Positions 1,906 through 63,126 of a DNA stretch of 64,000 nt are shown piece by piece. Under the pieces are notes generated by a model. It was not told the origin of the DNA. It did not search any database and worked only from the letters and a program-made list of their open reading frames with translations. The stretch's first letter is position 1, and the number at the start of each line of letters is the position of its first letter. Where the stretch lies: positions 298,019-362,018 of the IMG/VR virus record IMGVR_UViG_3300042502_001233. One strand, given 5' to 3'. A program made the position numbers and the translations under genes.

Positions 1906-2783
1906 TACGCAAAGTTTTCGTAGGCAGATTTCATTCTAACACTGTTTTTGAATTTTTTAAGTGTTTTTTCTCTAACTTGACGAACCATTTCACGTGTTAA
2001 GTTAACGTCTTTACCTACTTCTTCAAGTGTTCTAGCTGCATGACCATTTAAACCAAACAAAGATTCCATAATATACTTGTCTCTCGGTTTAAGAGTTTCA
2101 AGAAGCACGTTGATTTCTTCAACAACATCACTATTGTTTAACAAATAGTCTGTTGATTTATCTGTATCATCAGAAATCAAATCACCCAATGTTGAACTGT
2201 TACCTTCATCATTGTTGATTTCTCTATCCAAAGAGTCCACATTAAATGTAGACAAGGAATCTAAGAATTCAAATTCATCAGTAGTCATTTCGTTACCGAA
2301 TGCACTAATAACTTCTTGAATATCGACTCTGTGGTTGTTCTTTTGCTCCAACTCACTAACCAATTTATCCAACTTTGACAAGTTGTTGATTTTATTGGCT
2401 GGAAGTCTAACTATTTTACCGTGTTTAGAAATGTGTTCTAAAATAATTTTTCTAATTGACCATACGGCAAACGATATAAATTTATAACCCATACTTGGTT
2501 GAAACTTCTTCACAGCCAAAATAAGTCCAATGTTACCTTCGTTTACTAAGTCTTCCAATGGAATCTTGTCTGTTGCATATTTTTTAGCCACAGAAATCAC
2601 AAAACGTAAGTTTCTTTCAACCAATTCATCAGCAGCAGCTTTGTCACCATTTAAGACTTTTTCAGTCAACTTAGCTTCTTCATCAGGTGTTAGCATAGGT
2701 ATATCATTAACCTCTCTCAAATATTGTTTGAAAGATGCTATATCTCTGTTAGTAAGTTTGGAGGTAATTTTAAATTTTTTCAT
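1905..2783 (-). CDS. RNA polymerase sigma70-family factor (RpoD-like, short Bacteroidota type lacking region 1.1)
   Basis: YLREV..IPMLT (1.2), LVERNLRFVISVAKKY, DLVNEGNIGL, YKFISFAVWSIR (region 2), TLEEVGKDVNLTREMVRQ (region 4 HTH). Confidence 0.95.
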   Translation of the reverse strand: MKKFKITSKLTNRDIASFKQYLREVNDIPMLTPDEEAKLTEKVLNGDKAAADELVERNLRFVISVAKKYATDKIPLEDLVNEGNIGLILAVKKFQPSMGYKFISFAVWSIRKIILEHISKHGKIVRLPANKINNLSKLDKLVSELEQKNNHRVDIQEVISAFGNEMTTDEFEFLDSLSTFNVDSLDREINNDEGNSSTLGDLISDDTDKSTDYLLNNSDVVEEINVLLETLKPRDKYIMESLFGLNGHAARTLEEVGKDVNLTREMVRQVREKTLKKFKNSVRMKSAYENFA

Positions 2784-2838
2784 CGTATATGTTTATTTGG
2801 GTGTTACTATTATTATTTGCAAATGTAATACAAAGTTT

Positions 2839-3285
2839 TTAATCATTTAAACTTCTTTGTAAATCTTTTTTCAAGTCTCTATCCTTGATTGTTTCTCTCT
2901 TGTCGTGTAGGTTCTTACCTCTGGCTAACCCAATTTCTAGTTTGATTAACCCTTCGTTCGTTAATTTGATTGCTAAAGGTATGATTGTCAGACCCTTCTC
3001 AGAAACCTTTTCTTTCAACTTTAGGATTTCTTTCTTCTTCATTAGAAGTTTTCTATCTCTCAAAGGTTGGTGATTGTTGTATTTGCCACCTTCTTTGTGT
3101 TCGGCCACGTGCATACCTTTGATGTATATTTCATCATCTTGGATGAAACAATACGCTTCCGATATGGAAGTTTTGCCACCTTTGATTGATTTAACCTCGG
3201 AACCTTTAAGCTGAATACCAGCTGTGTGTTTATCGAGTATGTTGTATTCGAAAAAACCTTTCTTATTGCTTACTATTGTTTTCAT
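2839..3285 (-). CDS. smpB: SsrA-binding protein SmpB
   Basis: NKKGFFEY, AGIQLKGSEVKSIK, RDRKLLMKKKEI, GLARGKNLHDKRETIKDRD. Confidence 0.97.
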   Translation of the reverse strand: MKTIVSNKKGFFEYNILDKHTAGIQLKGSEVKSIKGGKTSISEAYCFIQDDEIYIKGMHVAEHKEGGKYNNHQPLRDRKLLMKKKEILKLKEKVSEKGLTIIPLAIKLTNEGLIKLEIGLARGKNLHDKRETIKDRDLKKDLQRSLND

Positions 3286-3983: not shown

Positions 3984-4679
3984 TTAAACTTTTGCTGCTG
4001 ATGGTTCCCCATCAATGATTACTAAATATTCACCAGTTGTTCCTATGGTGTCGATACCAATCAAACTATCAGTTATCGTTAGTTCTTCGATTGTGGTGTG
4101 ACCCACAACAAATCGATAACCATCTAACTTGTTTTTTAATAGTGATGGTATTCTAACCCATATTGGGGGTTGTGTAACATCATTACCACTATTACTAAAG
4201 TTATCACCGTAAGTAAACCTAAACGATTCAATGTTTGACATGAACCTTCTGTTTACTGAATCTTCCAACTCGGATAAGTTTATGTCATTATTTTCACACC
4301 ATGTTTTGGTTAACCCAGCGTGTGTGAACACAAAATCTTCATAAACATAACACATCTGTAACAAACCAGTTGATACGGCTGGTTCCAAGACTTCATTAAT
4401 ATCAATAGCTTTAAACTTCTGATACCCAGAATAAGTTTCTTGAGCTCCTTTAAGATAATGAAAGTCGTGATTACCAATAAGCAAAATAACCTTATCCACA
4501 TTTTCTTTTTTAAAATTTAGAATGTCTATAAAGTTCTGTATTTGTTGGTCTACTGAAACATCGTAATGCGTGTCGAAATAATCTCCTATAAAGACTATTT
4601 TATCAGCATCAGTTTCTTTAGCCACGATATTTTTCCAGTGGATGCGACCATGAGTGTCGCCAAGACATACTATTTTCAT
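3984..4679 (-). CDS. calcineurin-like metallophosphoesterase
   Basis: GDTHG, GDYFD, GNHD, THAG, GHT motifs. Confidence 0.92.
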   Translation of the reverse strand: MKIVCLGDTHGRIHWKNIVAKETDADKIVFIGDYFDTHYDVSVDQQIQNFIDILNFKKENVDKVILLIGNHDFHYLKGAQETYSGYQKFKAIDINEVLEPAVSTGLLQMCYVYEDFVFTHAGLTKTWCENNDINLSELEDSVNRRFMSNIESFRFTYGDNFSNSGNDVTQPPIWVRIPSLLKNKLDGYRFVVGHTTIEELTITDSLIGIDTIGTTGEYLVIIDGEPSAAKV

Positions 4680-6685: not shown

Positions 6686-6784
6686 TGCGAGAGGATGGAT
6701 TCGAACCACCGACACCTAGTCCCTAGTTGTTCCCTTGTACTTCGGGCTAAAAACCTTAGCGTTTACCAACTTCGCCACTCTCGC
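6686..6784 (-). ncRNA. tRNA-like RNA with remodelled anticodon/variable region
   Basis: Acceptor GCGAGAG/CTCTCGC, Leu-type D arm, T arm GGTGG-TTCGAAT-CCATC; no canonical 7-nt anticodon loop. Confidence 0.6.
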
Positions 6785-6869
6785 AGTTTCTAGTCTTTCC
6801 CAGTGTCACCCACTTATAAGCCTCTAGGTTTTTGTTCCTGTTAGGGTAAGGCAATTAATCACAATGTAA

Positions 6870-7517
6870 TTATTTTCTTCCTTGAACCCAACCTTCGTTT
6901 AAGTAGGTTTCAAGGTCTTCTTTTTTAATTTTTTTGTTGGTACCATCTTTGGTTATCCAACATGTACCATATTGACTGTTTAATTCGCCAATACCAGTGT
7001 TTTTCATTTTTTCTGATATTAATATCTTAGATTCCTCTGAATGTTTTTTACCATCCCAATCGTGAAAATATTTTTTTTCACGTTTACCTTCTTTATATGC
7101 TCTTTTTAAACCGTTAGAATGATTTTGTTTATAATTTATTTTAAATTCTAAATCATTTTCTCTTTTTTTAGCTAAACCTTTACCACCAGAACTTGAACAT
7201 TTAATCATATGTTCTTCACTTGAAAACCCACCTTGACCACCTTCCTTAAGGTTCATACATTTACCATCAGAAATTAATTCTTTGGTAACTAACTCAATCT
7301 CTCTAAGAACTAATTCTTCTCTTGTCGGTAAGAACTCAAGTATTTCTTTGGTATGGTTTTCTACACCATATTTTCTAATTGAATATCTGAGTATTTTACC
7401 ACTCCCCATATAACCATCATCTAGGTTACTTGTGCTATGCATCCCTACATACCATCGTCCAGTTACATTACATGTTGTTTTATATATGTAATGTATGTTT
7501 CTTTCTTTTCTTGCCAT
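6870..7517 (-). CDS. GIY-YIG (Seg-like) homing endonuclease
   Basis: HYIYKTT...WYVGMH...YMGSG; NUMOD3-like GKKHSEESKILIS. Confidence 0.92.
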   Translation of the reverse strand: MARKERNIHYIYKTTCNVTGRWYVGMHSTSNLDDGYMGSGKILRYSIRKYGVENHTKEILEFLPTREELVLREIELVTKELISDGKCMNLKEGGQGGFSSEEHMIKCSSSGGKGLAKKRENDLEFKINYKQNHSNGLKRAYKEGKREKKYFHDWDGKKHSEESKILISEKMKNTGIGELNSQYGTCWITKDGTNKKIKKEDLETYLNEGWVQGRK

Positions 7518-7574
7518 TTTACTTCTTTCTAAATAAATATCTAGAAATTATAAAAAGTACAAAAAAGTTTAAGG

Positions 7575-7648
7575 TGGAAGTAACGGGACTCGAACCCGTG
7601 TTCTCGCAACATCAGCCGCTTTATACTATCCTATTGTACTATACTCCC
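7575..7648 (-). ncRNA. tRNA-like RNA with Ala-type acceptor (G3:U70) and 4-nt anticodon loop
   Basis: GGGAGTA/TACTTCC-A acceptor, D and T arms intact; central hairpin GCGGC-TGAT-GTTGC. Confidence 0.6.
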
Positions 7649-55864: not shown

Positions 55865-55931
55865 AATATTTAATTTTATTATAAATATCCAGTTAAAAAT
55901 AAAAAAACCTATACATTGTATAGGTTTTCAT

Positions 55932-56189
55932 AACAAAGTGAGCTTAGCCGCGATTCTGTTTTAATCCATAATTTATCTTTGCCACTACCCGTCTATCGTC
56001 ACAATCCAAGTTCCCTTGCTAAGACTGTATGTGTTGCATCCCGTGTTGCGGTAGTAGTAACGAATGTTCAGATGTTAACTAAAGTATTTAAACTTAGGTG
56101 CCAGCCATCTGCTGCTTACTAATTCTTCTACCTCTTGGAGAGATGTCGCGAACTTCCTCTGTTGCCAGCTATGGATTCTCTGCTTTGTT
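55932..56189 (-). ncRNA. rnpB: compact RNase P RNA
   Basis: CR-I GAGGAAGTTCGCGA pairs with CR-V ACAGAATCGCGGCTA (P4); CR-IV AGATAAAT; P1 ACAAAG/CTTTGT, P2 ATCCATA/TATGGAT, P3 CTG-GCAA-CAG; terminator hairpin near 55905-55928. Confidence 0.85.
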
Positions 56190-56192
56190 TTG

Positions 56193-56308
56193 TGGGGCGG
56201 CTGGAATTGCACCAACGTTTTTCAAATTTACAGTTTGGTTTTGTGAATTAAATTGCTGCAAACATTCTTCATAAACAGAATGTGTTGTTCTAACATTTTA
56301 ACACCCCC
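56193..56308 (-). ncRNA. degenerate tRNA-Tyr(GTA)-like RNA with inserted CAGCAA stem
   Basis: CAAA-CTGTAAA-TTTG anticodon arm; insert ACATTCT/AGAATGT-TTGCAGCAA between D region and anticodon arm. Confidence 0.55.
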
Positions 56309-56333
56309 ATATTAGTCACAAAAAAGTGACCAG

Positions 56334-56407
56334 TGCAGTAGACGAGACTCGAACTCGCAACCCTTGACTTGGCAAGCCAATACTCTAACCAATTGAGCTA
56401 CTACTGC
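56334..56407 (-). tRNA. tRNA-Gly(GCC)
   Basis: Full cloverleaf; TTGGC-TTGCCAA-GTCAA. Confidence 0.93.
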
Positions 56408-56546
56408 ATTTATGCCTCTCTCTGCATCCGTCACACCCCATTTGTATTCTGTTAATCTCCTAAGACTGTTTGCTACGCTTGACATAAAGTCTCAGCCCTT
56501 AAAAGGATTTTCCTAACGGTAAATCGGTGTCAAAAACCAGTATTTC

Positions 56547-57359
56547 TTAATACCACCACCATTTAGCTTGGTTTCTGTTTTGGTAATGAAACTCTTGGAA
56601 GTCTTGACTCCAAGCGCTAGCACTGGTCCAATCAGTCCAATCACTATCGGTGATAAACTCTCTTTCAGTCATTTCGTTACCTTGTTCTTTGTGCCACTCA
56701 TGAGAGTCGTTAATGAACATGGTGTTGAGGTTCTTTCTAAGAGCCATTTTGTCTTTGCGTCTGTTTCTTTTTGAGACACTTTTTAAGAACCAAGAATAAC
56801 CACCCTCATTGTAAGGATTCATAATAGTTCTAAGATGCCAAAGTTGGTCTCTTACAAATCTTAATTCTCGTTCTAACTCACCATCAACCACTTTACGGTG
56901 AGTGATGTAACTGTTTCTGATTTTCATAACAAAATAAAAATCTGGAACGTAAGACGCTGAGTAATATTTAGCTATAGTACCGTTCCAACGTGGTTTATCA
57001 TCTAAATGATTGTGTCGGAAATACTTTGCCACTTGTGGCGGCAATTTTAAATATTGTTCCTCAGACATTAATTTTATCTTAGGTTTTCTATCAATCACAT
57101 AACCTCTCTTTTTTTCGTAGAACACAGTCGTTGGAGACCATGTTAACGTAGAGCAATTATCAATGATGTATTGGAATACCCAAGCATCTTGTCTTCTAGA
57201 AATGTCTTCTCTTAATTCCAAATAAGCTTCATAGCCTTTGTGTATTGGTTTTTCAAGTTCAACATAACCTAAATTTTTGATGGCCATTTCAAGCTCATCT
57301 TCTTTTTCCATTAACGCTAAATAGCGTTTGTAATCTTTGTGTTTTGTGTTTTTACTCAT
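56547..57359 (-). CDS. hypothetical protein within tRNA cluster
   Basis: 270-aa ORF. Confidence 0.75.
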   Translation of the reverse strand: MSKNTKHKDYKRYLALMEKEDELEMAIKNLGYVELEKPIHKGYEAYLELREDISRRQDAWVFQYIIDNCSTLTWSPTTVFYEKKRGYVIDRKPKIKLMSEEQYLKLPPQVAKYFRHNHLDDKPRWNGTIAKYYSASYVPDFYFVMKIRNSYITHRKVVDGELERELRFVRDQLWHLRTIMNPYNEGGYSWFLKSVSKRNRRKDKMALRKNLNTMFINDSHEWHKEQGNEMTEREFITDSDWTDWTSASAWSQDFQEFHYQNRNQAKWWWY

Positions 57360-57488
57360 TTGTTCTCGGTATAGGGATTTGACCCTTAGTACCTCGAACC
57401 TTTTAAAATTGCAATCATAGTTTTCCTTTTTTATTAATTAGTATTTTATTAGAGTACAAATATACGAACTCTTTTTATAAATAGCAAG

Positions 57489-57758
57489 TTATTTGTTATA
57501 ATTTTTTAAATTATGTTCTACACACATAACCGCTTCTGCGATAGCCACTTTGGCATCTTCAACGTCTTTTGCCCAAGTAACCACACCCAAATTAGGTATC
57601 GTTACCTTGATGAAACCGTCTGGTCTTCTTTCAATGACGCTATTTCTGGTATCTTCTACCAACTTCTCAATTCTTTCTCTGTGCTTTCTAGAGCGTTCTG
57701 CTAACCTAGCTTTACTTTCCTCTGAAAGCTTTCCACCTAAGTATACAAAACTTTCCAT
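57489..57758 (-). CDS. hypothetical protein with HicB-like C-terminal segment
   Basis: VTIPNLGVVTWAKDVEDAKVAIAEAV. Confidence 0.55.
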   Translation of the reverse strand: MESFVYLGGKLSEESKARLAERSRKHRERIEKLVEDTRNSVIERRPDGFIKVTIPNLGVVTWAKDVEDAKVAIAEAVMCVEHNLKNYNK

Positions 57759-57773
57759 AATTAATATTTTTAG

Positions 57774-57853
57774 AGCCGATGGAGGGACTCGAACCCCCGA
57801 TGTTTGTATACCGCTTTACAAAAGCGGTGCTGTCGCCACTGAGCCACATCGGC
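57774..57853 (-). tRNA. tRNA-Thr(TGT), enlarged variable loop
   Basis: GCCGATG acceptor; CCGCT-TTTGTAA-AGCGG. Confidence 0.85.
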
Positions 57854-57956
57854 ATTTAATAGCTATCAAATCGTGGATATCATTGATTTGAAATAAACTT
57901 ATTATCCTTTCTGCAAGGAATGACAACCATCTCTGAAGTTTACTTATCACTATTTG

Positions 57957-58030
57957 AGCCTCAGACAGGAGTCGAACCTGCGACCTGCTGATTACAAATC
58001 AGCTGCTCTGGCCATCTGAGCTACTGAGGC
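57957..58030 (-). tRNA. tRNA-Thr(TGT)
   Basis: GCTGA-TTTGTAA-TCAGC. Confidence 0.95.
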
Positions 58031-58038
58031 ATATATTG

Positions 58039-58122
58039 TGGGCAAGGAGGGATTCGAACCCCCGAAGTCGAATGACAGATGTTTTACAGACACCGCGCTT
58101 TGAGCCGCTTGCATACTTACCC
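58039..58122 (-). tRNA. tRNA-Tyr(GTA)
   Basis: GGTGT-CTGTAAA-ACATC, long variable arm. Confidence 0.93.
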
Positions 58123-58186
58123 ATAACGGCCTATAACGTTTGCCACTCGATGGGTATTTCTTTCTCGCAGTACCATTTCTGCCGTG

Positions 58187-58265
58187 TGGGCCTAGAGGGA
58201 ATCGAACCTACAAGAATTAACACGATTTTACAGACCGCTGAGCTCACCACCTGCTCAATAGACCC
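58187..58265 (-). tRNA. tRNA-Tyr(GTA), imperfect T stem
   Basis: GCGGT-CTGTAAA-ATCGT. Confidence 0.75.
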
Positions 58266-58271
58266 AATTTC

Positions 58272-58330
58272 AGGGTGGTGTATCGGTTTCAAATTAAAAG
58301 TTTGATGATAAAGATTGCTGAAACCACCCT
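58272..58330 (-). ncRNA. mini RNA: CAGCAA stem carrying an isolated Lys(TTT) anticodon stem-loop
   Basis: AGGGTGG-TTTCAGCAA...TCAAA-CTTTTAA-TTTGA...CCACCCT. Confidence 0.6.
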
Positions 58331-58334
58331 TTAG

Positions 58335-58406
58335 TTGGAATGTAGGGACTCGAACCCTAAAAATGACGGTCAAAGTGTCATATGTTGCCAATTACATCAC
58401 ATTCCA
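58335..58406 (-). tRNA. tRNA-Gln(TTG)
   Basis: TGGAATG acceptor; loop CTTTGAC. Confidence 0.85.
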
Positions 58407-58417
58407 GTATAATATTG

Positions 58418-58488
58418 TTGTCCTACAAGGATTCGAACCTTGAATGACTGGCTCAAAACCAGTAGTGTTACCGTTACACTATAGGACA
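58418..58488 (-). tRNA. tRNA-Gln(TTG)
   Basis: ACTGG-TTTTGAG-CCAGT. Confidence 0.92.
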
Positions 58489-58661
58489 ATAACTCTAATT
58501 CTATGCTCGTCCTCACGCAACTCTATAAATTAGTAACAGTCTTATCTACAACGTCAGTAGGACTTAAAAGGAACCACTCATTTATATCCTTTCTATCAAC
58601 GGGGAATCACTCCCATGCTTGGCGTAATCCATACATCACTGCATGTCTATCCTACTTATTG

Positions 58662-58735
58662 AGCGATTATTCGGATTCGAACCGAAACCAGAGACTTGGA
58701 AGGCCCCTGTGCTAGCCGTTAAACACCATAATCGC
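58662..58735 (-). tRNA. tRNA-Gly(TCC)
   Basis: GGGGC-CTTCCAA-GTCTC. Confidence 0.92.
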
Positions 58736-58786
58736 AATTTTCTAATTTATTTATTTCATCTAAAACATAGTTTATATATTATTTTG

Positions 58787-58859
58787 TGCTCCCGAAGGGC
58801 CTCGAACCCTTTACCCCTCCGTTAAAAGCGGAGTGCCCGTCCACATGAGCTTCGAAAGC
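58787..58859 (-). tRNA. tRNA-Lys(TTT)
   Basis: CTCCG-CTTTTAA-CGGAG. Confidence 0.85.
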
Positions 58860-58883
58860 AATTATCCATTTCTGGATTTTTAG

Positions 58884-58957
58884 TACCCCCGAAGAGACTC
58901 GAACTCTTGACTCCCCGCTTAAAAGGCGGGTGCTCTAACCAACTGAGCTACGAGGGT
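58884..58957 (-). tRNA. tRNA-Lys(TTT)
   Basis: CCCGC-CTTTTAA-GCGGG. Confidence 0.95.
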
Positions 58958-59045
58958 ATATTACACTCATAACCAATTGGTCTGAGTGACTTAACGTTTA
59001 CGCTTTATGTTCTTTATATTTTTCATTTGTTTTATTGTTGTTTTT

Positions 59046-59121
59046 GGCCTCCCAGAAGGATTCGAACCTTCCATCCATAAGCCCCCAATGGGCTGCGCTT
59101 TTCCTACTAAGCTATGGGACG
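59046..59121 (-). tRNA. atypical tRNA/pseudo-tRNA, anticodon ambiguous (TGG or TTG)
   Basis: D and T arms intact; AGCCC-ATTGG-GGGCT anticodon arm is non-canonical. Confidence 0.5.
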
Positions 59122-59127
59122 CATATT

Positions 59128-59475
59128 TTATTTTTGTCTTTCTTTTAATTCTTCAACCGTTAAATTATAACGATGTAATATTCTATGATGATTCGCACAA
59201 AGGCAAACACATTTTTCAATTTCATTTATAATTTTAACATTAGACCATTTATGGTTACATACAGCGGCTATTGTAAATTCTTTATCATCTTTGTCTATGT
59301 GATGAAAATCTATACAAGCTTTATCCGCTTCCCCACAAACTAAACAAGGTTTTTTTAAGGTTTCTACTAAATCTCTAATTTCTTGTCTTCTTTGTCTTTG
59401 TTTTAAATTATGAATTTCTTTATTGTTTTTAAATTCATTTTGTTTCCATTCTTTTTGTTTTTCTGTCTGTGCCAT
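59128..59475 (-). CDS. small HNH endonuclease
   Basis: CLVCG...DFHH...KCVCLCANHHR. Confidence 0.88.
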   Translation of the reverse strand: MAQTEKQKEWKQNEFKNNKEIHNLKQRQRRQEIRDLVETLKKPCLVCGEADKACIDFHHIDKDDKEFTIAAVCNHKWSNVKIINEIEKCVCLCANHHRILHRYNLTVEELKERQK

Positions 59476-59598
59476 ATTTTCTTTTTATTATAAATATGTT
59501 CAAGTCATACAAAAAGACTAGAATTTATCAAATTATTAGCCATTATTTTCATAATGTTTCCAGTAACCGCTGCGTGGAAGCTATTTGATATGGTTACT

Positions 59599-59687
59599 TC
59601 TAAGTGATGGGACTCGAACCCACATGATGCTTTTTACACAATTCTCGTTTCCAAAACGAGTCGGCTTCCAATTGCCTTCACACCTAG
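59599..59687 (-). tRNA. tRNA-Pro(TGG) with long variable arm
   Basis: CTAGGTG/CACTTAG acceptor; CTCGT-TTTGGAA-ACGAG; T arm GTGGG-TTCGAGT-CCCAT. Confidence 0.7.
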
Positions 59688-59701
59688 TTATTTTGTTGCA
59701 T

Positions 59702-61872: not shown

Positions 61873-62214
61873 ATGACAAAGGTACAAATAAAAAATGACA
61901 CTACCAAATGATAATGCCATTTTTTTTGAAGGAAGCACTGCTTTACGGTAAATTACCAACCTAATTTTTGGGTCGACTGGAGTTAACAATCGGACTGTCC
62001 ACCAGCTTATTTTTTATAAAACAAGCAAAAACCTAGAAGAACAGTGACTCAAGGGAATACTCATACCTCGGCTCTAGAAACCTTTCATTTAGTTTCGCCC
62101 CCTGTATAGATAGTTTATACTCTATCAGATACCCGTGGTCAGCCACAGCTCTTTTTCTACATATCCCAATTGTGGGAAAGGGAGCCACCTCTAAACTACT
62201 TGAGTTTGTTCTCG

Positions 62215-62400
62215 TATGGTGAGTAGGATTCGAACCTACTAGGTAAGGGTTCCTTCATTGGCTGTTAAGCACCTTCATGAGGCTCAGTTTCGCCACCCTC
62301 TGCACAAACCACGACTTACTTTCCCATTTACCTTAACTGATGTTGAGACGTGCGTTCGTTTACCTTATTGTCTTTTAGCGTTCCCAGACGCATTCACCAT
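62215..62400 (-). ncRNA. expanded tRNA-like RNA (about 185 nt)
   Basis: ATGGTGA/TCACCAT closing stem next to T arm GTAGG-TTCGAAT-CCTAC. Confidence 0.45.
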
Positions 62401-62411
62401 ATGTGAGTGAC

Positions 62412-62538
62412 AAGATTGCGTTTTAATAGTGCTACCCATTACACCACACGCCCAACACCTCTATTAGGACATGCTGGGACTCGAACCCAGACCTTCTCGA
62501 TTTCAAAGCGAATTGTACAAATTTGCTGAAACAATCTT
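62412..62538 (-). ncRNA. circularly permuted tRNA-like RNA with CAGCAA stem (Y-RNA-like)
   Basis: AAGATTG-TTTCAGCAA, anticodon arm, T arm, CATGTCC-loop-GGGCGTG, D arm, CAATCTT. Confidence 0.75.
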
Positions 62539-62731: not shown

Positions 62732-62846
62732 TACAAGAGATTGGATTCGAACCAATGCCACTCCCACGTCTCGCATCCAATCTAAAAGGGAATCGAACCC
62801 TACGCACGGTTACAGGGGGAGTGCTCTTCCGCTAAGCTACTCTTAT
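62732..62846 (-). ncRNA. tRNA-like RNA with about 45-nt insert, including a second T arm, in the anticodon loop
   Basis: ATAAGAG/CTCTTGT acceptor, D arm, ACTCCC/GGGAGT stem, insert AGGG-TTCGATT-CCCT. Confidence 0.6.
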
Positions 62847-62998
62847 ATTTGAGGCTGAGGCCTCTGTGTTGTAGTGACTACAAAGTCTATCCACTCTTCT
62901 ACCTACATCTCTACTACCACTCCGATATAGGGTGGGATGGTTCGGTCTCCTTATTTAGCATTCCTTTCTCAAGGGAACAACACAATATTTTAGACAAC

Positions 62999-63126
62999 AA
63001 GATTACTTTTTTTCTTTTACGTGCTCTAACCAACTGAGCTACCGACCCACTAGGAGCCGAGTGGGACTCGAACCCACGACCACGAGCTTAACAGGCTATA
63101 GATAGTTTTGTTGCTGAAATAATCTT
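62999..63126 (-). ncRNA. circularly permuted tRNA-Asn(GTT)-like RNA with CAGCAA stem (Y-RNA-like)
   Basis: AAGATTA-TTTCAGCAA, AGC-CTGTTAA-GCT, T arm, TCGGCTC-CTAGT-GGGTCGG, GCTC-AGTTGGTTA-GAGC, TAATCTT. Confidence 0.8.

What the first reader, a model, noticed from the sequence alone, without database searches (positions are those of the whole stretch)
56193..58330. Same CAGCAA stem in two other topologies: inside a Tyr tRNA and on a bare Lys anticodon hairpin
Seen: at 56193-56308 the stem plus TTGCAGCAA is inserted between the D region and anticodon arm of a non-permuted Tyr(GTA)-like tRNA, i.e. the same circle opened elsewhere. At 58272-58330 it carries only TCAAA-CTTTTAA-TTTGA, a Lys(UUU) anticodon stem-loop. 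Stem sequences differ between the copies (AGAATGT, AGGGTGG, AAGATT) but stay paired, which is natural covariation. Known: tRNA-Lys(UUU) is the PrrC target. Inference: a modular protein-binding handle displaying anticodon loops, placed within the putatively attenuator-controlled region.
Basis: partly seen in the sequence, partly recalled or inferred. Interest (0 to 1): 0.72.

Follow-up and report, generated by a model that had tools for sequence, protein, structure and literature searches.

The report
Phage Ro-type RNAs carrying tRNA parts
The two elements are real members of a large, so far uncurated family of phage small RNAs that share a short helix plus an invariant CAGCAA motif, carry pieces of tRNA as cargo, and are encoded next to a very divergent phage relative of the Ro60 RNA-binding protein, so they are best read as a new kind of phage Y RNA.

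Summary
Both elements exist as described, on the minus strand. 58330-58271 is a 7-8 bp helix, UU-CAGCAA, and a Lys(UUU)-type anticodon hairpin. It fills the spacer between two tRNAs. 56308-56192 is a tRNA-Tyr(GUA)-like body whose D-arm/anticodon-arm junction holds the same helix, closed as a hairpin, followed by UUG-CAGCAA.

The hexamer alone is not enriched. The composite is a conserved family: more than 250 copies in IMG/VR phage contigs, at least 8 in this 362-kb lake phage, and copies in Felixounavirus, Listeria P100-like phages and a mycobacteriophage. It is almost absent from 185,000 bacterial genomes. The helix covaries strongly and CAGCAA is invariant. A model built without this window scores 58268-58334 at 40 bits (E 6e-8).

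Cargo length is bimodal: a hairpin only, or a whole permuted tRNA-like body. A few copies are non-permuted like 56308-56192.

The family is linked to a DUF2828+DUF7788 protein whose predicted fold is Ro60 (Z 12-16). In 80 loci chosen by that protein alone, 55 RNA hits all lie on the gene's strand, and 50 are within 500 nt.

Best reading: phage Y-RNA-like RNAs whose handle binds the phage Ro60-like protein. Binding, expression and the anticodon-nuclease (PrrC) idea remain untested.

The parts
58271..58330 (-). el3: minimal handle RNA. Helix 58330-58323 / 58279-58272 plus closing U.G-type G at 58271; UU-CAGCAA (CAGCAA 58320-58315); spacer; cargo; A/C-rich return strand.
   Evidence: Sequence. 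CM R1 built without it: 40.1 bits, E 5.7e-8. The minimum-energy fold gives the helix plus the hairpin.
58289..58305 (-). el3 cargo: anticodon-type stem-loop, 5 bp, loop CUUUUAA (UUU, Lys-type).
   Evidence: The same hairpin type occurs in 13 other short family members.
56192..56308 (-). el4: non-permuted tRNA-Tyr(GUA)-like RNA with the handle as an internal hairpin between the D region and the anticodon arm. Acceptor 56308-56302 / 56199-56193; discriminator C at 56192.
   Evidence: Orthologue L119 and same-topology relatives L014, L020, L035, L044. The L044 copy lies 54 nt upstream of a Ro60-like gene.
56253..56283 (-). el4 handle: strands 56283-56277 and 56268-56262, loop 56276-56269, then U-UG-CAGCAA (CAGCAA 56258-56253).
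   Evidence: The hairpin is in both the minimum-energy and centroid folds. The UUGCAGCAA variant is also seen in L155, L185 and L194.
56222..56238 (-). el4 anticodon-type arm, loop CUGUAAA (GUA).
62998..63126 (-). el1 (context): long handle RNA. Helix 63126-63120 / 63005-62999, CAGCAA 63116-63111. Cargo is a permuted tRNA-like body: T arm, acceptor closed by a loop, D arm.
   Evidence: Rfam YrlA 41.2 bits, below the cut-off of 69. R1 22.2 bits. Orthologues in L035, L037, L070 and L098.
62411..62538 (-). el2 (context): second long handle RNA. Helix 62538-62532 / 62418-62412, CAGCAA 62528-62523, permuted tRNA-like cargo.
   Evidence: Rfam YrlA 21.3 bits. Orthologues in L035 and L070.

Best explanation
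el3 and el4 are two of at least eight members, in this phage, of a phage-specific family of Y-RNA-like small RNAs.

What defines the family: a handle made of a 7-9 bp helix (consensus U-AGGAUNNN / NNNAUCCU-G, inner pairs free to covary), followed on the 5' strand by U-N-CAGCAA, and faced by an A-rich return strand. This is a stem plus an internal loop with an invariant motif, the same layout as the Ro-binding module of Y RNAs.

Proposed mechanism:
- The handle is the docking site for the phage's own very divergent Ro60 homologue (DUF2828+DUF7788, encoded at genome position about 64.7-66.1 kb).
- The variable cargo is a tRNA-derived module, apparently copied from neighbouring tRNA genes. It may be a bare anticodon-type hairpin (el3), a hairpin plus a T arm, a whole permuted tRNA-like body (el1, el2), or a normal-order tRNA-like body with the handle as an extra arm (el4).
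- The cargo presents a tRNA shape to a tRNA-directed factor, either tethering that factor to the Ro-like ring or acting as a stabilised decoy during infection.
- The RNAs are made as part of tRNA-array transcripts and are released by the ordinary tRNA end-processing of their neighbours.

Shown: family membership, helix covariation, motif invariance, restriction to phages, gene linkage and strand, and the Ro60 fold of the protein.

Inferred: physical binding, release by tRNA processing, and what the cargo engages.
For: Family:
- Two motif scans of IMG/VR gave 228 loci with 267 helix-plus-motif instances.
- Cargo length is bimodal, 28-41 nt and 86-118 nt.
- 90 non-redundant short elements align with CAGCAA invariant and 6 of 7 helix pairs showing compensatory changes.
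- Covariation controls are clean.

Membership:
- R1 scores el3 at 40.1 bits and finds three more copies elsewhere in the genome at 40.7, 37.9 and 27.7 bits.

Phage restriction:
- Only 3-4 true hits in 185,579 species genomes, all on tiny MAG contigs.

Protein link:
- ORF clustering of the RNA-selected loci puts one roughly 473-aa protein first: 28 loci, 25 of them with elements, usually 25-300 nt away on the same strand.
- Pfam calls it DUF2828 plus DUF7788.
- The AF2 model (pLDDT 75.6) matches only Ro60 proteins over both domains. Foldseek top 13 hits have E 5e-8 to 4e-5; VIA-align gives Z 12.4-16.2 over about 390 residues.
- Reverse test: in 80 loci picked by the protein alone, R1 gives 55 hits in 40 loci, all on the gene's strand, with 50 within 500 nt (binomial p about 1e-61).
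- In this phage's own clade the gene is followed at once by a conserved long handle RNA with the variant motif U[UA]CUGCAA (UGCAGCAA here).

Cultured phages show the same arrangement:
- Three tandem copies 70-340 nt upstream of Listeria phage CKA15_055.
- Four copies in the tRNA array behind the Felixounavirus gene.
- One copy 100 nt behind a mycobacteriophage gene annotated 'Ro-like RNA binding protein'.

Precedent:
- Y RNAs are found by exactly this adjacency and same-strand criterion, and phage Ro60 binds adjacent Y-like RNAs (PMC4201824, PMC12135203).
Against: - No binding data. The complex-prediction tool does not fold protein with RNA.
- No expression data for el3 or el4.
- el3 and el4 themselves lie about 65-73 kb from the Ro-like gene, counting across the joined genome ends, so for these two copies the linkage is by family and not by position.
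- The conserved motif is not the GNCGAAN0-1G / CGAA motif of known Ro-binding sites. Rfam YrlA does not reach its cut-off on any copy and misses el3, el4 and the cultured-phage copies altogether.
- In el4 the handle is a closed hairpin and not the paired RNA termini, unlike every described Y RNA.
- About half of the cargos are not anticodon-like, so a single cargo function is not evident.
- The protein has no sequence-level similarity to solved Ro60 proteins. The assignment rests on a predicted fold.
Confidence: 0.62

Rival explanations
1. They are unusual but real tRNA genes: permuted (el1, el2) or intron-like interrupted (el4). The helix plus CAGCAA would be a cut-and-ligate signal that yields ordinary tRNAs, and el3 would be a decayed remnant.
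For: - Long forms contain an anticodon arm, T arm, 7-bp acceptor and D arm in permuted order.
- el4, L014, L020 and L044 have free acceptor ends.
- The phage has an Rnl2-type RNA ligase.
- M. smegmatis YrlA is cut by RNase P and receives CCA (PMC4201824).
Against: - Short forms with only a hairpin are the commonest class (about 120 of 267) and are well conserved, so they are not decay products.
- Only about a third of long cargos have a canonical anticodon arm.
- The phage has no tRNA splicing endonuclease and no RtcB.
- The handle has no bulge-helix-bulge shape.
- el4 duplicates two normal tRNA-Tyr(GUA) genes and has a mismatched acceptor end, a 3-bp D stem and an atypical T loop.
- This reading does not explain the tight linkage to a Ro60-like gene.
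Confidence: 0.1
2. The handle is bound by some other factor, not the Ro60-like protein: a host protein such as an RNase or chaperone, or another phage protein. The gene adjacency would then only reflect shared location in tRNA and RNA-repair islands.
For: - The loci also hold Pnkp-like kinase and phosphatase genes, a metallophosphoesterase and an RNase-H-like DUF458 gene.
- CKA15 has RtcB nearby.
- el3 and el4 are far from the Ro-like gene.
- The motif differs from known Ro sites.
Against: - No other protein cluster comes near the Ro-like one in frequency or proximity.
- 50 of 55 RNA hits lie within 500 nt of the gene and all are on its strand.
- The arrangement recurs in unrelated phage groups of Gram-positive, Gram-negative and actinobacterial hosts.
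Confidence: 0.15
3. The elements are processing spacers of tRNA operons (RNase III-, E- or P-guiding hairpins) with no life of their own.
For: They sit exactly between tRNAs, a few nucleotides from tRNA ends.
Against: - An invariant single-stranded hexamer, a conserved U.G closing pair and elaborate tRNA-like cargos are not needed for a spacer.
- Many copies lie next to the protein gene without flanking tRNAs.
Confidence: 0.08
4. They are DNA-level repeats: miniature mobile elements or recombination sites with inverted repeats.
For: Multiple copies per genome with short inverted repeats.
Against: - Strict strand bias: 55 of 55 hits on the gene's strand, and always co-oriented with the tRNAs.
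- The conserved U.G wobble (79 of 90) would be A.C on the other strand.
- The inner helix pairs covary freely while the loop motif is fixed.
- No target duplications were seen.
Confidence: 0.03

Closest known systems
Bacterial and phage Y RNAs of the YrlA type with Rsr/Ro60 (Rfam RF02553; Chen et al. 2014, PMC4201824; structure in bioRxiv 10.1101/312249)
   Same: - Small RNAs encoded beside, and on the strand of, a Ro60-fold protein gene.
- Modular: a stem plus internal loop with a short invariant motif near the 5' strand, and a second module that mimics tRNA.
- Long forms have the same permuted tRNA topology: T arm, loop-closed acceptor, D arm. el1 scores 41 bits on the YrlA model.
   Different: - The motif is U-N-CAGCAA (CUGCAA in one clade), not GNCGAAN0-1G.
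- The protein is DUF2828+DUF7788 and is not detected by the Pfam TROVE model.
- The tRNA-like cargo often keeps a separate anticodon arm, which YrlA lacks.
- Cargo can shrink to a single hairpin (el3).
- The handle can be an internal hairpin of a normal-order tRNA-like RNA (el4).
- There are many copies per genome, scattered through tRNA arrays.
- The family is essentially phage-only.
Thermus phage phiLo Ro60 with Yrl1/Yrl2 (PMC12135203; PDB 9KOP, 9L5Y)
   Same: - A phage-encoded Ro60-fold protein with adjacent Y-like RNAs upstream of the gene.
- It is the best or near-best structural match of the protein modelled here.
   Different: - phiLo uses a canonical TROVE protein and a CGAA-motif bulge.
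- It has two RNAs and no tRNA-array context.
- Binding and PNPase recruitment were shown there. Nothing has been shown here.
Circularly permuted and intron-containing tRNA genes of Cyanidioschyzon, some green algae and Thermofilum (as reviewed in PMC4090602)
   Same: The gene order 3' half, linker, 5' half, with paired leader and trailer. The interruption sits at a non-canonical position.
   Different: - Those have a bulge-helix-bulge junction cut by the splicing endonuclease and mature into working tRNAs.
- Here there is no such motif and no endonuclease, and most family members cannot give a tRNA at all.
Ro60-like proteins of cultured phages noted in passing: Bas63 gp130 (bioRxiv 10.1101/2024.10.10.617714) and Listeria CKA15_055 (PMC12282133)
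   Same: - The CKA15 protein is a member of the same family by tblastn. Bas63 gp130 was not checked and is linked only by its genus and gene order.
- Both papers guessed that nearby RNAs might be Y RNAs.
   Different: - Neither paper defined the RNAs.
- The abundant CKA15_059-061 transcript is a ROOL-like RNA (90 bits). The handle RNAs lie in the unannotated 400 nt just upstream of CKA15_055.

Membership tests
Y RNA / YrlA (Ro60-associated RNA) | Encoded near, and on the same strand as, a Ro60-fold protein gene | tested here: met
   Met for the family: 50 of 55 hits within 500 nt and all on the gene's strand, in loci selected by the protein. One variant copy directly follows the gene in this phage. 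el3 and el4 themselves are distant copies inside the tRNA arrays.
Y RNA / YrlA (Ro60-associated RNA) | Conserved GNCGAAN0-1G (CGAA) motif in the Ro-binding module | tested here: not met
   The invariant motif is U-N-CAGCAA, or U[UA]CUGCAA in one clade.
Y RNA / YrlA (Ro60-associated RNA) | Score at or above the Rfam RF02553 gathering cut-off (69 bits) | tested here: not met
   el1 scores 41.2 bits and el2 21.3 bits. There is no hit on el3, el4 or the copies in cultured phages.
Y RNA / YrlA (Ro60-associated RNA) | Stem formed by the RNA's 5' and 3' ends, plus a second effector module | tested here: inconclusive
   The topology fits for el1, el2 and el3. In el4 the stem is an internal hairpin. 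The true RNA ends are unknown, as there is no read support.
Y RNA / YrlA (Ro60-associated RNA) | Physical binding to the Ro60 protein | not testable with these tools
   Complex prediction does not fold protein with RNA.
Ro60 / TROVE protein (for the partner protein) | HEAT-repeat ring followed by a vWA domain | tested here: met
   AF2 model plus Foldseek and VIA-align: the top 10-13 hits are all Ro60, covering model residues about 14-458, Z 12.4-16.2. Hits to vWA alone rank below.
Ro60 / TROVE protein (for the partner protein) | Match to Pfam TROVE (PF05731), or sequence similarity to solved Ro60 proteins | tested here: not met
   No TROVE hit in the genome. A profile search against PDB sequences finds nothing. 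Pfam assigns DUF2828 plus DUF7788.
tRNA (for el4) | Cloverleaf recognised by tRNA finders, with a 7-bp acceptor, a 4-bp D stem and a canonical T loop | tested here: not met
   ARAGORN makes no call. Rfam tRNA gives a partial 20.8 bits against a cut-off of 29. There is a G1.A72 mismatch, a roughly 3-bp D stem and the T loop UGCAAUU.
Permuted or split tRNA genes matured by splicing | Bulge-helix-bulge junction and a splicing endonuclease | tested here: not met
   The handle is a plain helix with a one-sided loop. There is no PF01974 hit and no RtcB in the phage. Host enzymes were not examined.

The most novel reading that the evidence does not exclude
The handle RNAs are Ro-protected tRNA decoys, a counter-defence device. 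The phage Ro60-like ring stabilises a set of uncharged, uncleavable-end mimics of the anticodon arms most often attacked by host anticodon nucleases, such as Lys-UUU, Thr-UGU, Arg-UCU, Asn-GUU and Tyr-GUA. These mimics soak up such nucleases, or deliver them to degradation. On this reading a phage tunes its decoy set simply by copying a neighbouring tRNA's anticodon arm into the handle.
Probability: 0.2. Interest if true: 0.85.

Novelty: new variant of a known kind. Interest (0 to 1): 0.72.

Why it matters
Ro60-Y RNA particles are known, but in bacteria they are tied to one RNA family (YrlA/Yrn) and to canonical TROVE proteins. What the tRNA-like module engages is still an open question.

What this adds:
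- A second RNA solution, restricted to phages, with a different invariant motif. It pairs with a protein family that Pfam still files as two domains of unknown function.
- That protein family is present in hundreds of cultured phages, including Felixounavirus, P100-like, Schizotequatrovirus and mycobacteriophages.
- The cargo series runs from a bare anticodon hairpin, through a hairpin plus a T arm, to a whole tRNA-like body, permuted or not. It reads like a natural deletion series of the effector module. It points to the anticodon arm as the part that matters, at least in many copies.
- Because the system occurs in laboratory phages of E. coli, Listeria and M. smegmatis, the question of what a Y RNA's tRNA mimicry is for becomes directly testable. 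One such protein has already been reported to counter a defence system.
- For annotation, some 'tRNA' calls and small hypothetical ORFs in phage tRNA arrays are really these RNAs.

Tried and rejected
- Hexamer enrichment: TTGCTG/CAGCAA alone is at chance level, so it is useless as a test by itself.
- My first regex pass wrongly suggested only four copies in the genome. The covariance model later found three more, plus a variant.
- Rfam at gathering and at E-value thresholds finds no family for el3 or el4. It gives only weak YrlA hits on el1 and el2.
- Pfam TROVE finds nothing in the genome, and a profile of the protein finds nothing among PDB sequences. Only fold comparison revealed Ro60.
- Complex prediction on the protein plus el3 RNA was not folded and gave no verdict. 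It is not evidence either way.
- Expression: four lake metatranscriptomes laid on 55900-59700 gave only generic tRNA fragments and a related strain's ORF. Nothing covered el3 or el4.
- Bacterial genomes: the pattern scan gave 32 stretches, nearly all chance matches in coding DNA.
- Alternative pairing of CAGCAA with the 3' tail, as the YrlA model aligns el1, or UUUCAG with CUGAAA in el3, is not conserved across the family and was dropped.
- The neighbours of the phage's own Ro-like gene (DnaJ, RNase HII, ClpP, a lysozyme-like protein) say nothing about function.
- RNase P-like RNA: a pattern scan for relatives returned two chance hits.
Full report
**What is in the sequence**

The window is the last 64 kb of a 362,018-bp, 31% G+C single-contig virus record from lake water. 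It has Bacteroidota-style promoters, judged from the sequence. Its minus strand carries a tRNA array (13 ARAGORN calls in the window). A further 32 tRNAs lie at the other end of the contig, so the two ends form one tRNA region if the genome ends are joined.

- el3 (58330-58271) is an 8-bp helix, then UU-CAGCAA, a 9-nt spacer, a 5-bp hairpin with loop CUUUUAA, a 9-nt return and the second helix strand. It occupies the whole spacer between two tRNAs.
- el4 (56308-56192) has an acceptor stem (6 of 7 pairs), a reduced D region, and a 7-bp hairpin followed by U-UG-CAGCAA. After that come an anticodon-type arm with loop CUGUAAA, a T arm and the 3' acceptor strand.
- Tools do not call el4 a tRNA.
- Two further copies in the window, el1 (63126-62998) and el2 (62538-62411), enclose permuted tRNA-like bodies. 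They give sub-threshold hits to the Rfam Y-RNA-like family YrlA.

**Is it more than chance?**

The hexamer alone is not enriched (29 found, 24.5 expected). The composite is.

- Scanning IMG/VR with two short patterns returned 228 loci. A script found 267 instances in them of a helix of at least 7 bp placed 0-2 nt before TT(G)CAGCAA.
- The distance to the partner strand is bimodal, 28-41 nt and 86-118 nt. There are some intermediates and a few cases where the partner lies just upstream, forming a hairpin as in el4.
- Ninety non-redundant short elements from other phages align with CAGCAA invariant and the flanks conserved (UUUU-AGGAU... / ...AUCCU-GUU). Six of seven helix pairs show compensatory changes; one pair reads CG 29, AU 28, GC 19, UA 13.
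- With a 9-pair structure, 90.1% of cells pair against 73.7% in shuffles. The covariation score is 0.467 against 0.124 (0 of 500 shuffles as high), and at most 0.085 for slid partners. The outer pair is a conserved U.G wobble in 79 of 90, which marks the structure as RNA on this strand.
- A covariance model built from that alignment, which contains no sequence of this window, scores el3 at 40.1 bits (E 5.7e-8) and el1 at 22.2 bits.
- Over the whole genome the same model finds three more copies at 40.7, 37.9 and 27.7 bits.
- The UUG-CAGCAA variant and the AGAAU helix of el4 both occur in other members.
- el4 has an orthologue of identical design in L119. The same non-permuted topology, with other loops, is seen in L014, L020, L035 and L044.
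- In 185,579 prokaryote species genomes the short-form pattern gave only three or four true hits, all on very small MAG contigs. The family is therefore essentially a phage feature.

**What it is linked to**

I clustered all ORFs of the RNA-selected loci. The most widespread cluster is a protein of about 473 aa, present in 28 loci, 25 of which contain elements. It usually lies 25-300 nt from an element on the same strand.

- Pfam calls the protein DUF2828 plus DUF7788.
- This phage has one copy at about 64.7-66.1 kb. It has no Pfam TROVE hit.
- A profile of the family finds nothing among PDB sequences.
- The AlphaFold model (pLDDT 75.6) matches Ro60 proteins and nothing else over its full length. 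The Foldseek top 13 hits include the Thermus phage phiLo, Xenopus, human and Deinococcus proteins (E 5e-8 to 4e-5). VIA-align gives Z 12.4-16.2 over about 390 residues spanning the helical ring and the vWA domain, with vWA-only hits ranking below.

The reverse test is independent of the RNA motif. At least 580 viral contigs encode the protein. In the 80 best loci the RNA model gives 55 hits at E no higher than 0.01, in 40 loci. All 55 are on the gene's strand, and 50 lie within 500 nt up- or downstream of the gene (binomial p about 1e-61).

The closest relatives of this phage's protein lack such hits. Instead, they and this phage have a conserved long RNA directly after the stop codon, with the same helix logic and the motif variant U[UA]CUGCAA (UGCAGCAA here).

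The protein family is present in 711 GenBank phage records. The handle RNAs sit where expected in three groups of cultured phages:

- three tandem copies 70-340 nt upstream of Listeria phage CKA15_055;
- four copies inside the tRNA array behind the Felixounavirus gene;
- one copy, annotated as tRNA-Asn, 100 nt behind the gene annotated 'Ro-like RNA binding protein' in Mycobacterium phage Wilder.

Rfam YrlA does not detect any of these.

**How it most likely works**

The layout is that of the Ro-binding module of Y RNAs: a stem, then an asymmetric internal loop carrying a short invariant motif on the 5' strand, then a variable module. The adjacency and same-strand rule is the very criterion by which bacterial Y RNAs were found (PMC4201824). 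A phage Ro60 has been shown to bind adjacent Y-like RNAs (PMC12135203).

I therefore read the helix plus CAGCAA as the docking site of the phage Ro60-like protein, and the cargo as the effector module.

- Cargos look copied from neighbouring tRNA genes. el3 (UUU) lies 450 nt from the tRNA-Lys(UUU) pair. el4 (GUA) lies downstream of two tRNA-Tyr(GUA) genes. A copy with a UAA loop plus a T arm sits inside the Leu cluster.
- Short elements begin a few nucleotides after a tRNA 3' end and stop a few nucleotides before the next tRNA. Ordinary tRNA end-processing would therefore release them. This step is inferred.
- What the cargo engages is not known. Canonical anticodon-type hairpins are present in 57 of 107 short and 26 of 74 long cargos. 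UUU (13) and UGU (12) are the commonest.
- The surrounding loci often hold RNA-repair-type genes: a P-loop kinase, phosphatases and a metallophosphoesterase, plus RtcB in CKA15. This phage has an Rnl2-type ligase but neither RtcB nor a splicing endonuclease.
- The most economical function is a Ro-Y-type particle acting on tRNA-directed processes during infection. It could tether a tRNA-binding enzyme to the ring, or act as a Ro-stabilised decoy for anticodon-directed nucleases.
- Two published observations fit, without proving it. In a preprint, the Ro60-like gp130 of Bas63 counters the Ppl defence; I did not check that gp130 belongs to this protein family and infer the link from its genus and gene order (10.1101/2024.10.10.617714). 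CKA15_055 is found in virions (PMC12282133).

**Rivals**

- Real tRNA genes needing cut-and-ligate maturation. The dominance and conservation of hairpin-only forms, the lack of a bulge-helix-bulge motif or an endonuclease, and el4's defects and redundancy argue against this.
- Another binding partner. This remains possible, because the motif differs from known Ro sites and el3 and el4 are far from the gene.
- Mere processing spacers. The invariant single-stranded motif and the elaborate cargos argue against this.
- DNA-level repeats. The strict strand bias and the U.G wobble argue against this.

**Comparison and novelty**

It works like a Y RNA, but it fails two membership tests for YrlA: the motif and the Rfam score. 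Its protein partner also fails the TROVE sequence tests while meeting the fold test. Chen et al. searched only genomes annotated with TROVE proteins (PMC4201824), so this protein-RNA pair was outside their net.

I found no paper naming DUF2828 or DUF7788 in this connection. Two papers merely guess that RNAs near such phage proteins could be Y RNAs.

I rate it a new variant of a known kind. It has features not described for Y RNAs: multiple copies embedded in tRNA arrays, a graded cargo series down to a single anticodon-type hairpin, and a version (el4) in which the handle is an internal arm of a normal-order tRNA-like RNA.

**Limits**

- There is no binding evidence (one search was not folded).
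- There is no expression evidence for el3 or el4.
- The instance counts from the script include some chance helices, so the covariance-model results are the safer numbers.
- The attenuator idea in the finding was not examined.

Noticed in passing
window 55932-56189 (-): An RNase P RNA-like sequence begins 3 nt after el4. Rfam RNaseP_arch gives 22.6 bits against a cut-off of 84 (E 1.6e-4 on a 601-nt search). The motifs GAGGAAGUUCGCG and ACAGAAUCGCGGCUAAGC can form a P4 helix with the bulged U. An intrinsic terminator follows at about 55905-55935. One RNA-library contig from a relative covers 56030-56197. A phage-encoded minimal RNase P RNA would be unusual.
   Followed up: partly
window 59527-59598 (-): An HDV-like ribozyme match (RF02682, 32.3 bits, cut-off 44) abuts the 3' end of tRNA 59599-59687. 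This resembles the HDV-like ribozymes reported behind phage tRNAs.
   Followed up: no
window 62732-62846 (-): A tRNA (Rfam 47 bits) with a 49-nt insert in the anticodon loop. The insert contains a second T-arm-like hairpin.
   Followed up: no
window 6686-7648 (-): Two odd tRNA-like genes flank a GIY-YIG homing-endonuclease-like ORF (about 6870-7547). One is 6686-6784, with a long insert. The other is 7573-7648, for which ARAGORN gives an undetermined anticodon.
   Followed up: no
window 62000-62410 and 58490-58660 (-): Long non-coding stretches inside the tRNA region with T-arm-like hairpins (for example around 62230). No Rfam match, and unexplained.
   Followed up: no
G000:C1:8772-8866, 56996-57056, 58034-58107 and about 64506-64645 (all -), outside the window: Four further handle RNAs of the same genome. 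The last is the variant (UGCAGCAA) that directly follows the Ro60-like gene at 64.7-66.1 kb. The first carries a Leu-type loop plus a T arm and sits inside the tRNA-Leu cluster.
   Followed up: yes
L346 (Listeria phage CKA15, OR088597.1) 2470-3021: The very highly transcribed 'CKA15_059-061' region of the published transcriptome is a ROOL-like RNA (RF03087, 90.1 bits, cut-off 99.1), so it is not a Y RNA. The handle RNAs lie at L346:3660-3930, in unannotated DNA just upstream of the Ro-like gene.
   Followed up: partly
L349 (Mycobacterium phage Wilder) about 4530-4660; L347 (Escherichia phage nataliec) 6120-6990: In public records the handle RNAs are either annotated as a tRNA (tRNA-Asn in Wilder) or left unannotated between tRNAs (nataliec).
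   Followed up: partly
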